A stretch of 64,000 bases of DNA, taken from the sequence record NC_042098.1; one strand, given 5' to 3'. Numbering within the stretch: the stretch's first letter is position 1; each line of letters opens with the position of its first letter. The notes under the pieces were generated by a model. The model searched no databases. It was not told the origin of the DNA and saw nothing but the letters and a program-made list of their open reading frames with translations. A program made the translations under genes and the position numbers. Positions 5,771 through 43,110 of this stretch are shown here, in pieces.

Positions 5771-5799
5771 AAGGGGTTTCGGCCCCTTTATTTTTTTTT
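5771..5799 (+). terminator. Intrinsic terminator
   Basis: AAGGGG-t-ttcg-g-CCCCTT followed by a T-tract. Confidence 0.85.
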
Positions 5800-7582: not shown

Positions 7583-7616
7583 GAGCTCACCCTAACCGGT
7601 GGGCTCTTTTTTTTTT
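7583..7616 (+). terminator. Intrinsic terminator
   Basis: GAGCTCACC-ctaacc-GGTGGGCTC followed by T10. Confidence 0.85.
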
Positions 7617-7638
7617 GTCTTCTTTTTTTTGTTCGGGG

Positions 7639-30969: not shown

Positions 30970-30992
30970 ATCTTTTTTTTTGGTTTACAGCG

Positions 30993-31439
30993 TTATACCA
31001 GGCGCTGAGTTAACTGCGAACTATATTGAATAGCGTGATAGGTCGCAGGTTTCTCAAGCTGCTCGGTGCAGCGGTAGACTGGGGTCTTCATAAAAGGACA
31101 ACCGGCATTCATTAATGCCTCACGGTTGCTGGGTGACTCATCAACGCGAATCACCACATCCGTGGACTGGAAGCCAAAGACTTCCCGCTTCGTTGCAGTA
31201 TATTCTGCATCCAGCACCACGATCTTACGGTTGATCACCAGCTTCACGGCCACCGGGTATTTGATTACCAGGTCTGACCCTAAGCCCGCCAAGACAAACT
31301 TAATGACAAACTTCTTAAGTCCATTTAGCAACTGACTCTCACTGGCCCAACTTTTAACAATCTGCAGCATGTGTGTATTTCCACTCATATAAGGGGAAGT
31401 TAAGAAAAGCAACCTGAGGGTCCGTCCGTGATCCCTCAT
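30993..31439 (-). CDS. Hypothetical protein, last gene of the minus-strand late operon
   Basis: 148 aa; starts 7 nt after the upstream stop. Confidence 0.6.
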   Translation of the reverse strand: MRDHGRTLRLLFLTSPYMSGNTHMLQIVKSWASESQLLNGLKKFVIKFVLAGLGSDLVIKYPVAVKLVINRKIVVLDAEYTATKREVFGFQSTDVVIRVDESPSNREALMNAGCPFMKTPVYRCTEQLEKPATYHAIQYSSQLTQRLV

Positions 31440-31445
31440 AATGTA

Positions 31446-31917
31446 TTACTTCATACCGTCCAACTGCTTTTGAAGTTCCTTTAACTGACGGCTTGCATCC
31501 GGCGTCTCGGCGTCATGATCTCTGATCGCTTCAATAAACGACTTTCGTTTGCAATAAGGATACTTCATCCATTTATCAAATGACAAACCAAATTTGCCCA
31601 AGATATCCGCACGCAGATATTCGAGCTCATACTTTCGATACCCAACTAACGCCAGCGAGTCTTCCTGCTCGACCTGTAAGATTAACGAGAGCGGCGAGGT
31701 TTCCACGTTATGGTCAATAATCCCAAACGTGTCATCGTAAAGCTCTGTTAATCGAATTAGTGGATACTCCCAGTTCTCGGTAAGAAACGTGGGGTTTTCT
31801 AACGCGACATCCCAGGCATCGGACCGATCACTTTCGGACAGACCGAAATCCCAATGGATTAGATGTCGGCTTGATCGAACGTCTGATTCAGTGTATTCGT
31901 CATTAGGGTAAAAAAAA
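31446..31917 (-). CDS. -1 frame extension of the upstream chaperone-like gene (GT-like / gp51-like C-terminal part)
   Basis: Open -1 frame with no ATG until near its end, beginning at a T8 run. The C-terminal KFGLSFDKWMKYPY...FIE resembles chaperone-extension or gp51-type helices. Confidence 0.65.
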
Positions 31918-33478
31918 CCCGTGCTACGTTCAGCGGGGTGTACGCAGGGAAGGTGTTGCTCACCAGTGGTTGGCGCGCCTGGCAGTTCGGGCATTTCCAA
32001 CGCGGTACTGCGACCACACCGACTGTTACCCGGTTGATGAACTTGTTCAGCTCTTCAAAGAACGGTTTACGCATATCCGGGGTTGCACTGAATTGCTTCA
32101 GCAGCAGCGCCACGTCATCGGCCGACTCAACATAGTTGCCGTCGTTGAACTCGATCTTGGTCACCCAGTGGGCGTAACCGCGCATGGAGGACAGCGCTGC
32201 CTGTTTGTTGATGTGCTGCTCACGCTGCTCACGCGTCATGCTGTCGTTGAAGCTGTCGGTGATCGCTTGTTGAATGCCGTTGATCCAGGCATAACCCGCT
32301 GCATTCTTATCTTCGAGTGATGGCACCCGCAGATAGAACTTCACATCTTTCACAGTGATGACATTGTCTTTCATCACTTCAAAGCCGGTCTGATAGGCAA
32401 TGACCTGCTCGACGGTACGGCCGCTGAAGTGAGACATGTGCGCACGCTGGGTTGGTGACAGACGATTGTTGTCAATGATCGACAGACGAGAGACGTTAAC
32501 TTTCGCTGCTTCAACATGCACACACTTCTTCGGATCGGCGGCACAGGCAGTAACCATGTGGTAGCCAGACTTAAAGCGTGCGCCCAGGTAGGCGTTAGCG
32601 ATCAGATCGAGATCCTGCTCTTTGATTAACGGCAGCAGGGTTTTCTTATCGGAGACACCGATGCTGCTGTCAGTAACCATACCCAGCAGGAAGTCGGTCA
32701 TGTGCTTACGCACCACGACATCCAGGTTGTTAAACACCAGACCGTTGGTACGACGACCGAGGATCGCTTTCTCAGCCATGATGGCGGTTTGCATATCCAC
32801 AAACTCATCATCGCCGGCAATCAGCAACGTAACCCAGATACCAGAATGTGGCAGCGGCAGATGGACATAGTCACCCATGTTCATCACACCACGTGCCCGC
32901 ATCACTGCCTGTGGACCGGTCAGCAGTTTAGTGCCTTCGGTACTGCGCTTCACTGGCGGACGAGAAACACCCTGCACTTTGTTGCTGTCAAGCAGAATAC
33001 CCTGCAGCCACTGCGCGCCATCTTGACGAATGGTCAGGTTCAGACCAGAACGGTACGACAGGTTGGTGATGGCGTTACTGGCCAGGGATAGCCAGATCAT
33101 CGCTTTATCAGCACCGTACAGACTGACGATCTCTTTTAAGATCTTCTTGTCTTCGGTGTTGGTGTCGATCTCATTGATCAGCGCCGTCGCTGCATCGTAA
33201 TCCTGATGCATAATAGACAGCACACCTTCCGTGCCGACATCCTCCATGGAATTCAGCTTTTCAATGATCGGGTTCTGATAGAGCGGATCGAACGCCTGCT
33301 CAACGGCTTCAACTTCAGGTGCTTCAGCTTCACCCTGCTGGCCGGTTTCTGCTGGCTCGGGATCGGTGCCGATAGTACCAGTAGTCGCCGGACGACCTGG
33401 ATCAACTTCAGGGATACCAGAGTGGTTTTCTTCAACAGGCTCTTGCTGTGACAGAATGGATGGGTTATCACCGGACAT
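31859..33478 (-). CDS. Putative tail/baseplate assembly chaperone (phiKZ gp77 position; T4 gp26-like CxxC pattern)
   Basis: 539 aa with an acidic N-terminus, C..DP.KC and WKCPNC Zn-type motifs, and an AAGGA SD. Function is inferred. Confidence 0.55.
   Translation of the reverse strand: MSGDNPSILSQQEPVEENHSGIPEVDPGRPATTGTIGTDPEPAETGQQGEAEAPEVEAVEQAFDPLYQNPIIEKLNSMEDVGTEGVLSIMHQDYDAATALINEIDTNTEDKKILKEIVSLYGADKAMIWLSLASNAITNLSYRSGLNLTIRQDGAQWLQGILLDSNKVQGVSRPPVKRSTEGTKLLTGPQAVMRARGVMNMGDYVHLPLPHSGIWVTLLIAGDDEFVDMQTAIMAEKAILGRRTNGLVFNNLDVVVRKHMTDFLLGMVTDSSIGVSDKKTLLPLIKEQDLDLIANAYLGARFKSGYHMVTACAADPKKCVHVEAAKVNVSRLSIIDNNRLSPTQRAHMSHFSGRTVEQVIAYQTGFEVMKDNVITVKDVKFYLRVPSLEDKNAAGYAWINGIQQAITDSFNDSMTREQREQHINKQAALSSMRGYAHWVTKIEFNDGNYVESADDVALLLKQFSATPDMRKPFFEELNKFINRVTVGVVAVPRWKCPNCQARQPLVSNTFPAYTPLNVARVFFTLMTNTLNQTFDQADI
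31910..31917 (-). other. Candidate -1 ribosomal frameshift site (T TTT TTT)
   Basis: Minus strand reads CGG GTT TTT TTT ACC. The -1 frame reads TTT TTT TAC CCT and stays open for 154 codons. Confidence 0.7.
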
Positions 33479-43058: not shown

Positions 43059-43110
43059 CAGCATAAGGAGAGGCCTCGCGCCTCTCCTGTTTATGCCGTC
43101 TTTTTTTTTT
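43059..43110. terminator. Bidirectional hairpin flanked by CAGCATAA and TTATGCCG
   Basis: CAGCATAA-GGAGAGGC-ctcgc-GCCTCTCCT-GT-TTATGCCG followed by a T-tract, between convergent genes. Confidence 0.8.

What the first reader, a model, noticed from the sequence alone, without database searches (positions are those of the whole stretch)
31446..33478. Programmed -1 frameshift joining a CxxC chaperone-like ORF to a start-less downstream ORF (lambda G/GT-style recoding in a phiKZ-like phage)
Seen: 16 codons before its stop, the 539 aa minus-strand ORF reads CGG GTT TTT TTT ACC (A8 at 31910-31917 on the plus strand), a perfect X XXY YYZ heptamer U UUU UUU. The -1 frame (checked: 33478 mod 3 = 1, 32000 mod 3 = 2) continues FF-YPNDEYTES... 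for 154 codons to 31446. It has no ATG until near its end, its first GTG is about 45 codons in, and the track's TTG start has no SD. A shift gives a ~677 aa fusion. Hairpins (CCGA..AATCC-attg-GGATT-TCGG; TTCGG-tctgt-CCGAA) lie about 35-70 nt downstream. Known: most long-tailed phages make tail assembly chaperones G and GT by a -1 frameshift, and T4-like phages have separate gp26/gp51 hub chaperones. Inference: this jumbo phage makes short and extended chaperones at a fixed ratio by recoding. Caveat: the locus is not next to a recognisable tube or tape-measure gene. I am not aware of this being annotated in phiKZ-like phages, but could not search.
Basis: partly seen in the sequence, partly recalled or inferred. 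Interest (0 to 1): 0.85.

Follow-up and report, generated by a model that had tools for sequence, protein, structure and literature searches.

The report
Conserved -1 frameshift in jumbo-phage core gene
A core gene of the nucleus-forming (phiKZ-like) jumbo phages very probably makes both a 539-residue protein and a rarer, roughly 677-residue version, because some ribosomes slip back one base on a run of U; this goes unnoticed in every genome record I examined.

Summary
The window is Erwinia phage Desertfox. ORF1 (33478-31859, minus strand, 539 aa) carries U UUU UUU in the X XXY YYZ register, 16 codons before its stop. The -1 frame then runs 154 codons to 31446.

Comparison with relatives turns this from a curiosity into a strong case:
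- ORF1 is Chimalliviridae core gene cg18 (phiKZ gp77).
- In 71 non-redundant loci (phiKZ, 201phi2-1, SPN3US, AH06 and many metagenomic contigs, down to about 25% identity), the same Phe codon is always UUU, although UUU makes up only 37% of Phe codons elsewhere in the gene.
- 62 of 71 have a canonical U UUU UUN heptamer and 9 are near-canonical.
- The -1 frame is always open for 149-181 codons.
- It usually has no start codon for 20-85 codons.
- The start-less part shows third-position substitution bias.
- None of the 150 best family representatives has the two parts fused in frame.

This excludes a sequencing error. Run lengths of 5-9 favour ribosomal over transcriptional slippage. The downstream hairpins get no support.

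Function is unknown. The ORF1 fold has no PDB match and only a weak likeness to T4 gp26-type baseplate-hub proteins. I found no published report. No protein-level evidence exists yet.

The parts
31859..33478 (-). ORF1, 0 frame: 539 aa plus TAA. Desertfox gp269; Chimalliviridae core gene cg18 (phiKZ gp77, Goslar gp081, RAY gp267).
   Evidence: AlphaFold model: pLDDT 87.4, pTM 0.87. Invariant C312, C319, C496, C499 and F522 in 96 relatives.
31910..31917 (-). T8 run holding the slippery heptamer U UUU UUU (31916..31910) in the X XXY YYZ register. I treat it as a recoding signal, not as damage.
   Evidence: The same site and register occur in 62 of 71 non-redundant relatives (U UUU UUU/C/G), with near-canonical forms in the other 9. 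The first Phe codon is UUU in 71 of 71, against 37% UUU elsewhere in the gene.
31859..31909 (-). Overlap zone. It holds the last 16 sense codons plus stop of the 0 frame (most of a confident C-terminal helix, residues 518-538) and the first 17 codons of the -1 continuation.
   Evidence: This is the stretch of lowest nucleotide divergence in the locus: 6% against AH06, versus 19-27% downstream.
31446..31910 (-). -1 frame continuation: 154 codons plus stop (31448..31446). It would form the C-terminal part of the long product. GenBank gp268 covers it from a non-conserved upstream ATG at 31994.
   Evidence: PHROG phrog_13274. tblastn homology in distant phages begins at residue 1, immediately after the run.
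31707..31858 (-). Part of the -1 continuation beyond the ORF1 stop that has no ATG/GTG/TTG upstream in frame after the run, yet is the best-conserved part of that frame.
   Evidence: against AH06, 45 of 52 residues identical and nucleotide differences 4/7/19 at codon positions 1/2/3; against L007, 39 of 52 and 11/7/29. The nearly invariant Phe (residue 22 of the -1 piece) lies here.
31833..31870 (-). They are present but not supported as stimulators.
   Evidence: z = -1.25, covariation term +0.18, stems almost invariant because the stretch codes in two frames; they lie 39 nt or more from the heptamer.
31401..31438 (-). Weak hairpin followed by a U-rich tract just 3' of the -1 frame stop. It may mark the end of the transcription unit.
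   Evidence: window z = -1.2; AH06 keeps the hairpin with changed stem bases (z = -1.9); phiKZ has a strong one at the matching place (z = -5.1). No terminator-like site lies between ORF1 and the -1 frame.

Best explanation
ORF1 and the frame downstream form one recoded gene. Most ribosomes translate ORF1 to its stop and make the 539-aa protein. A minority slip back one base when tRNA-Phe occupies the U UUU UUU heptamer 16 codons before the stop. These ribosomes continue for 154 codons in the -1 frame and make a product of about 677 aa. In that product most of the last helix of the short form is replaced by a new C-terminal part: an N-terminal stretch predicted with low confidence, then a small helical domain. 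The two forms are thus made from one mRNA in a ratio set by the site.

Shown here: the signal, its register, the open start-less frame, the coding signature of that frame, and the conservation of all of these across the phiKZ-like family.

Inferred: that the shift happens, that the ribosome rather than the polymerase slips, and that the long form is the minor one.

The job of the protein is not known. The best lead is an assembly role distantly related to T4 gp26-type baseplate-hub proteins.
For: 1. Heptamer in register, followed by a 154-codon -1 frame.
2. The same architecture in AH06, Salmonella SA002, pEa_SNUABM_37, Proteus phage 10, phiKZ gp77, 201phi2-1 gp136, SPN3US gp39 and 94 IMG/VR loci.
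3. In 71 non-redundant loci: 62 canonical U UUU UUN and 9 near-canonical; 0-frame tail of 8-21 codons; -1 extension of 149-181 codons; -1 frame closed within 16 codons upstream in 47 of 71; first possible start 20 or more codons downstream in 67 of 71. Stop codons occur in the -1 frame of the ORF1 body at 0.086 per codon, so an open stretch this long has a chance of about 5e-7 per locus.
4. Selection at the nucleotide level: the first Phe codon is UUU in 71 of 71 loci although UUU is 37% of Phe codons elsewhere; the base before it is U in most loci, against 27% expected; the last base of the heptamer varies freely between U and C, as ribosomal re-pairing predicts.
5. The start-less part of the -1 frame has third-position substitution bias and higher residue identity than the rest. 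tblastn homology starts at residue 1 after the run.
6. None of the 150 best of 1317 family representatives carries an in-frame C-terminal extension. Gene callers give truncated downstream proteins of 101-144 aa.
7. Sixteen separately deposited close relatives keep the same 49-nt offset between the two frames.
8. U-run heptamers are known low-level shifters in E. coli (PMC5009743).
Against: - There is no protein, ribosome-profiling or transcript evidence; everything is comparative.
- No stimulatory element was found. The downstream fold is not significant, shows no covariation, and no conserved Shine-Dalgarno-like block lies upstream.
- U UUU UUU is a weak shifter in E. coli (PMC5009743), so the long form may be very rare.
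- Nine of 71 lineages have only near-canonical sites (G UUU UUY, G GUU UUU, G CUU UUU).
- The two Phe residues are conserved as amino acids as well (F522 invariant), so part of the conservation is owed to the protein.
- In a few lineages (SPN3US type, L095/L096) an ATG lies soon after the ORF1 stop and could serve as an independent start.
Confidence: 0.75

Rival explanations
1. Transcriptional slippage. The phage RNA polymerase stutters on the T run, and a fraction of mRNAs differ in length at that point. Ordinary translation of those mRNAs gives the long product.
For: The window has T8 and some relatives T9. Runs of A or T are known slippage sites (PMC5009743). These genes are transcribed by an unusual phage polymerase whose slippage behaviour is unknown. 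UUUUUUU is avoided in enterobacterial genes in all frames, partly for this reason (PMC4066793).
Against: Run length in 71 lineages: 5 (6 loci), 6 (10), 7 (35), 8 (18), 9 (2). Efficient slippage by bacterial polymerase is described for runs of 9, and none was detectable on a T5C5 tract. What is conserved is the codon register (U UUU UUN with a free last base), not maximal run length. The short-run lineages keep the whole -1 frame.
Confidence: 0.13
2. Two separate genes. The downstream frame is translated on its own, from the annotated upstream ATG or TTG, from an internal GTG/TTG/ATG, or by re-initiation after the ORF1 stop. No trans-frame protein is made.
For: This is how every record I looked at is annotated. 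The window has an in-frame ATG at 31994. SPN3US, L095 and L096 have an ATG 9-15 codons after the ORF1 stop.
Against: The upstream starts are not conserved: the -1 frame is closed within 16 codons upstream of the run in 47 of 71 loci and within 5 codons in 19. The first possible start after the run is a median of 35 codons downstream, yet the stretch before it is the best-conserved and shows a coding pattern of substitutions. No convincing ribosome-binding site precedes the SPN3US or phiKZ internal ATGs. An independent gene would not need UUU at the same codon in 71 of 71 lineages.
Confidence: 0.09
3. Artefact or decay. A miscalled homopolymer length in the assembly splits one gene, or the gene is a pseudogene.
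For: Homopolymers are the commonest site of length errors. The run alone is not rarer than chance in this window.
Against: The same two-frame layout appears in 16 separately deposited close relatives, in AH06, in phiKZ, 201phi2-1 and SPN3US, and in more than 90 metagenomic contigs. No in-frame fused form exists among the 150 best representatives. The 0-frame tail after the run is itself conserved and modelled as a confident helix. Both frames are constrained in the overlap.
Confidence: 0.01

Closest known systems
Lambda G/GT (and P2 E/E+E') tail assembly chaperone frameshift
   Same: A -1 shift on a slippery heptamer a few codons before the stop of the upstream gene. The overlapping downstream frame has no start of its own. 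The short and long forms share an N-terminal part, and the ratio is fixed by the site (30:1 in lambda; PMC5009743). No strong stimulator is known. From my own memory, not checked here: P2 uses a U-run heptamer.
   Different: ORF1 is 539 aa, not about 100-150. It has a different fold with a four-Cys site. It hits no tail-assembly-chaperone family, only sub-threshold Foldseek rows at E > 0.4. It lies beside virion RNA polymerase genes, not between tube and tape-measure genes. No role in tail assembly is shown.
T4 gp26-type baseplate hub protein (Pfam PF12322), called 'hub subunit' or 'hub assembly chaperone' in annotations
   Same: The ORF1 model matches predicted models of such proteins in BFVD: E 3e-6 to 1.6e-4, TM 0.50-0.57 normalised by target. 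One of 69 relatives hits PF12322 at E 1e-3, and one hits phrog_150 'baseplate hub'. The profile-profile alignment covers the Cys region and a following strand (E 1e-3). No chain in the PDB copy matches cg18 or the -1 piece, so neither is known as a virion part.
   Different: hhalign probability is only 21%. ORF1 is more than twice as long. gp26-type genes fetched here end without a -1 continuation, as far as their annotation shows, and are followed by a separate small gp51-type gene. The -1 piece resembles neither gp26-type nor gp51-type proteins.
dnaX-type and IS-element -1 frameshift sites of bacteria
   Same: X XXY YYZ heptamer decoded by a single tRNA species in both sites; two products from one gene.
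   Different: Those sites use A AAA AAG with an upstream Shine-Dalgarno-like element and a downstream stem-loop, and reach high efficiency. Neither element was found here.

Membership tests
Programmed -1 ribosomal frameshift cassette | Slippery heptamer X XXY YYZ in the 0-frame register | tested here: met
   U UUU UUU at 31916..31910. Canonical in 62 of 71 relatives, near-canonical in 9.
Programmed -1 ribosomal frameshift cassette | Long -1 frame that overlaps the end of the upstream gene and lacks its own conserved start | tested here: met
   154 codons here, 149-181 in relatives. First possible start 20 or more codons downstream in 67 of 71; upstream closure within 16 codons in 47 of 71.
Programmed -1 ribosomal frameshift cassette | Signal conserved beyond what the encoded amino acids require | tested here: met
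   UUU in 71 of 71 loci at the first Phe codon, against 37% UUU elsewhere in the gene.
Programmed -1 ribosomal frameshift cassette | Stimulatory element: downstream structure at 5-9 nt, or an upstream Shine-Dalgarno-like block | tested here: not met
   No significant fold (z = -1.25), no covariation, no conserved upstream block. Not obligatory for low-level sites such as lambda G/GT.
Programmed -1 ribosomal frameshift cassette | Trans-frame protein observed | not testable with these tools
   No proteomic or ribosome-profiling data at hand. No paper in the library reports it.
Lambda G/GT-type tail assembly chaperone | Gene pair between the tail tube and tape-measure genes | tested here: not met
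   Neighbours are a virion RNA polymerase subunit gene and proteins of unknown function.
Lambda G/GT-type tail assembly chaperone | Sequence or fold of a known tail-assembly-chaperone family | tested here: not met
   No Pfam hit. Foldseek rows for tail assembly chaperones only at E > 0.4.
Lambda G/GT-type tail assembly chaperone | -1 shift near the 3' end giving a C-terminally extended second product | tested here: met
   Layout as above; the shift itself is inferred.
T4 gp26-type baseplate hub (PF12322) | Match to PF12322 above its gathering score | tested here: not met
   No hit for ORF1. One of 69 relatives at E 1e-3. A true member, the DLP6 gp26 homologue, scores 187 bits.
T4 gp26-type baseplate hub (PF12322) | Profile-profile or fold similarity | tested here: inconclusive
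   hhalign probability 21%, E 1e-3, over 104 columns. Foldseek against BFVD models: E 3e-6 to 1.6e-4, TM 0.50-0.57. No PDB match.
Chimalliviridae core gene cg18 (phiKZ gp77 family) | Orthology with phiKZ gp77 / RAY gp267 / Goslar gp081 | tested here: met
   98% nucleotide identity to RAY at this locus. tblastn hit to PHIKZ077. cg18 row in the supplement of PMC10299810.
Transcriptional slippage site | Homopolymer long enough for polymerase realignment (about 9 A or T for bacterial polymerase) | tested here: not met
   T8 here. In relatives 5-9, with 7 or fewer in 51 of 71. Threshold from PMC5009743. The behaviour of the phage polymerase is unknown.

The most novel reading that the evidence does not exclude
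The frameshift is the jumbo-phage and T4-lineage counterpart of lambda G/GT. In this reading, a gp26-like hub-assembly factor is made in two forms at a fixed ratio. The -1 encoded domain tethers a second partner during assembly of the phiKZ-type baseplate or tail, or of another large structure such as the packaged virion RNA polymerase, whose genes lie next door. That would give the unknown core gene cg18 a mechanism and would extend ratio-setting by recoding to a second, unrelated class of phage assembly factors.
Probability: 0.2. Interest if true: 0.8.

Novelty: new member of a known kind. Interest (0 to 1): 0.62.

Why it matters
Nucleus-forming jumbo phages (phiKZ, 201phi2-1, Goslar, SPN3US, RAY) are model systems and therapy candidates, and cg18 is one of their 68 or so core genes with no known function.

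A family-wide recoding site would mean three things:
- These phages make a hidden protein of about 75 kDa that no annotation lists.
- The small downstream 'genes' (Desertfox gp268, phiKZ gp76.4, 201phi2-1 gp135, SPN3US gp40, AH06 gp283) are mis-called fragments of it.
- The ratio of the two forms is under selection, which is a strong hint of an assembly or stoichiometric role.

It also adds a deep, well-sampled natural series of U-run shift sites without obvious stimulators: more than 1300 family representatives at 50% identity. And it can be tested directly with proteomic or ribosome-profiling data that probably already exist for phiKZ and SPN3US.

Tried and rejected
- Pfam on ORF1 and the -1 piece: nothing. 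Pfam on 56 -1 pieces: only scattered chance hits.
- PDB by sequence, single and profile, for both parts: nothing credible. The Tako8 hit is a repeat artefact.
- Foldseek of the ORF1 model against the PDB: no match at E < 0.3.
- Structure of the -1 piece: pLDDT 62, with only the last 70 or so residues confident; its Foldseek search was empty.
- Downstream RNA structure: not significant, no covariation.
- hhalign of the ORF1 family against one gp26 homologue: negative. Against a 9-sequence gp26 alignment: weak.
- -1 piece against gp51-type and gp26-type proteins: negative.
- PHROGs for five neighbouring genes: all of unknown function.
- The simple terminator scan did not pick up the hairpin after the -1 frame.
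- The search for related loci with the 96-sequence alignment failed for lack of a conserved block. A 16-sequence subset worked.
- Literature: nine searches and several full-text look-ups found no mention of a frameshift in this gene. 'gp77' in the Goslar and PCH45 papers refers to other proteins.
- One script picked the wrong UUU codon in some loci (minimum extension 0). It was redone.
Full report
IDENTITY OF THE WINDOW. The region is 100% identical to Erwinia phage vB_EamM_Desertfox (MG655268, genus Agricanvirus). It is 97.8-99.3% identical to 15 other records of close relatives (Ea35-70, RAY, Special G, Deimos-Minion and others) and 81% identical to Erwinia phage AH06. In GenBank the two frames are gp269 (539 aa) and gp268 (182 aa, from an ATG inside gp269), both 'hypothetical protein'.

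THE OBSERVATION.
- On the minus strand ORF1 runs 33478..31859.
- Sixteen sense codons before its TAA it reads CGG GTT TTT TTT ACC, so U UUU UUU sits in the X XXY YYZ register.
- The -1 frame then stays open for 154 codons, to 31446.
- After the run, the first ATG/GTG/TTG in that frame is a GTG 68 codons on.
- The in-frame TTG (32000) and ATG (31994) upstream of the run lie inside ORF1 and have no ribosome-binding site at a usable distance (read).
- T7 runs as such are not rare in this window: 18 matches against 10.4 +/- 4.7 expected. The case therefore rests on context, not on the run.

HANDLING OF THE SITE. I treat the run as a recoding signal and give its coordinates as a feature. I built no sequence that joins the two frames, searched the two parts separately, and name no change that would merge the frames. 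I flag this in case a reader regards the site as a break.

RELATIVES CARRY THE SAME LAYOUT.
- AH06 has the same T8, the same 16-codon tail and a 153-codon -1 frame. That frame has no ATG/GTG/TTG for 85 codons, and it is closed 13 codons upstream of the run.
- tblastn with the -1 piece finds Salmonella phage SA002, Erwinia phages pEa_SNUABM_37 and pEa_SNUABM_48, and Proteus phage 10 at 40-49% identity. In each the match starts at query residue 1, immediately after a T7 or T8 run, 16 codons before the stop of the ORF1 homologue.
- ORF1 is core gene cg18 of the nucleus-forming phage family: phiKZ gp77, Goslar gp081, RAY gp267, listed as hypothetical (supplement of PMC10299810). tblastn finds it in 221 phage records.
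- phiKZ gp77, 201phi2-1 gp136 and SPN3US gp39 all have U UUU UUU or U UUU UUC at the same place, with a -1 frame of 160-165 codons. The small annotated genes gp76.4, gp135 and gp40 are the distal parts of those frames.
- Ninety-four IMG/VR loci show the same layout.

NUMBERS FOR 71 NON-REDUNDANT LOCI (below 80% crude identity).
- Heptamers: 42 U UUU UUU, 19 U UUU UUC, 1 U UUU UUG, and 9 near-canonical (G UUU UUU, G UUU UUC, G GUU UUU, G CUU UUU).
- 0-frame tail: 8-21 codons.
- -1 extension: 149-181 codons.
- The -1 frame is closed within 16 codons upstream of the site in 47 loci and within 5 codons in 19.
- The first possible start after the site is 20 or more codons away in 67 loci (median 35). 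The first ATG has a median distance of 54 codons.
- Stop codons occur in the -1 frame of the ORF1 body at 0.086 per codon, so an open stretch of about 160 codons has a chance of about 5e-7 per locus.
- The +1 frame is short in nearly all loci.

THE CONSERVATION IS AT THE NUCLEOTIDE LEVEL. The two Phe residues are conserved as amino acids: F522 is invariant and F523 is present in at least 90% of 96 relatives. That does not explain the codons.
- Elsewhere in these genes Phe is UUC 678 times and UUU 405 times (37% UUU). The first Phe codon of the site is UUU in 71 of 71 loci.
- The preceding base is U in most loci, against a third-position U frequency of 27%.
- The last base of the heptamer, which need not re-pair after a ribosomal slip, varies between U and C.

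THE -1 FRAME IS CODING FROM THE RUN ONWARDS.
- Between the ORF1 stop and the first possible start (codons 17-68 of the -1 piece), Desertfox and AH06 share 45 of 52 residues. Their nucleotide differences fall 4/7/19 on codon positions 1/2/3. For locus L007 the figures are 39 of 52 and 11/7/29.
- This start-less part is better conserved than the distal part.
- It holds one of only three nearly invariant residues of the -1 family, a Phe at position 22.
- The overlap itself is the least diverged stretch of the locus (6% against AH06, versus 19-27% downstream). This is what two constrained frames predict.

NO FUSED AND NO CLEANLY SEPARATED FORMS. HMMER against 1.84 billion representatives finds 1317 family members. 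The best 150 all end within about 25 residues of the end of the match, so none has the -1 part fused in frame. Gene callers report downstream proteins of 101-144 aa, shorter than the open frames.

MECHANISM.
- A sequencing error is excluded by the breadth of the pattern. It is also excluded by the identical 49-nt offset between the two frames in 16 separately deposited close relatives.
- Ribosomal versus transcriptional slippage: run length is 5 in 6 loci, 6 in 10, 7 in 35, 8 in 18 and 9 in 2. Efficient slippage by bacterial polymerase is described for runs of 9, and none is detectable on a T5C5 tract (PMC5009743). What is kept is the codon register rather than run length. I therefore favour the ribosome, with the reservation that the phage's own polymerase has not been characterised in this respect.
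- No stimulator was found. The 110 nt after the run fold no better than shuffles (z = -1.25). The consensus fold of seven relatives has a weak, almost invariant hairpin around the ORF1 stop, 39 nt from the heptamer, with no covariation support.
- U UUU UUU is a weak shifter in E. coli (PMC5009743), so the long form is probably a minor species, as in lambda G/GT (30:1, same source). This is inference.

WHAT THE PROTEIN IS.
- ORF1 gives a confident model: pLDDT 87.4, pTM 0.87. The first 60 or so residues are disordered, and a C-terminal helix spans 518-538. The site falls five residues into this helix, so the long form lacks most of it.
- Four Cys residues are invariant: C312, C319 and the CxxC pair C496/C499. 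This suggests a metal site (inference).
- The model has no PDB match.
- In BFVD it matches its own family. It also matches, more weakly, predicted models annotated as T4-like baseplate hub proteins: E 3e-6 to 1.6e-4, TM 0.50-0.57 by target.
- Sequence support is marginal: 1 of 69 relatives hits PF12322 at E 1e-3 and 1 of 69 hits phrog_150 'baseplate hub'.
- I fetched a true gp26-type protein from phage DLP6 (accession from PMC5349666) and eight relatives. The profile-profile comparison gives E 1e-3 but only 21% probability.
- The -1 piece has no family, no PDB relative and only a partly confident helical model. It resembles neither gp26-type nor gp51-type proteins.
- Neighbouring genes are uninformative. 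The Goslar virion paper does not mention gp81, and no PDB chain matches either part.
- A non-virion assembly factor is therefore plausible but unproven.

COMPARISON WITH WHAT IS KNOWN. As a recoding layout this works like lambda G/GT: a slippery heptamer just before the stop, a start-less overlapping frame, and two products sharing an N-terminal body. It is not a member of that family by position, size, sequence or fold. Membership of the gp26-type hub family is inconclusive.

NOVELTY. None of the eight records inspected annotates a joined CDS. Nine literature searches found no report. The library lacks most subscription-journal papers, so an earlier mention cannot be ruled out. I rate it a new member of a known kind (a programmed -1 frameshift in a phage gene). 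It is notable because it sits in a core gene of a much-studied family and is conserved over very deep divergence.

VERDICT. The recoding reading is strongly supported by comparative evidence but is not yet seen at the protein level. The hairpin stimulators are unsupported and the function is open.

Noticed in passing
window 31401-31438 (- strand); L002:7743-7785; L020:4652-4687: A hairpin plus U-rich tract lies directly after the stop of the -1 frame. It is weak in Desertfox, is kept with changed stem bases in AH06, and is strong in phiKZ (z = -5.1). No terminator-like site lies between ORF1 and the -1 frame, which fits one transcription unit covering both.
   Followed up: partly
window 31992-32000 (- strand): The GenBank start of gp268 (ATG 31994) and the TTG at 32000 lie inside ORF1 in the -1 frame. 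They are absent from AH06 and most relatives, so the annotated 182-aa protein is probably an artefact of gene calling.
   Followed up: yes
window 31855-31870 (- strand): A 16-nt block spanning the ORF1 stop is almost invariant from Desertfox to Salmonella phage SA002 and pEa_SNUABM_37, although the proteins are only about 42% identical. It is probably the footprint of two overlapping coding frames, but a role as an RNA signal is not excluded.
   Followed up: partly
window 31859-33478, ORF1 residues 312, 319, 496, 499: Four Cys residues are invariant in 96 relatives at 23-78% identity. They probably form a metal site tying the middle of the protein to the C-terminal region just before the slippery site.
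   Followed up: no
alignment A8 (gp26-type proteins from L103-L111): Most of the gp26-type baseplate hub proteins fetched as comparators end with a Phe-Phe pair one residue before their C-terminus, and F201 of the first sequence is invariant. This recalls the Phe-Phe at the cg18 slippery site. hhalign did not align these ends, so this is a resemblance only.
   Followed up: no
window 5791-5799, 7607-7630, 30973-30981, 43101-43110 (+ strand): There are five other T runs of 8-10 in the window. The one at 30973-30981 lies just after the end of gp266 and may be a terminator tract. Whether any of the others lies inside a gene was not checked.
   Followed up: no
L045-L049, L051, L053 (IMG/VR contigs): One metagenomic lineage has only a T5 run (0-frame CTT TTT ATT) at the site, yet keeps a 178-codon -1 frame that opens three codons before it. 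This would be a natural test case for a minimal U UUU tetramer shift site.
   Followed up: partly
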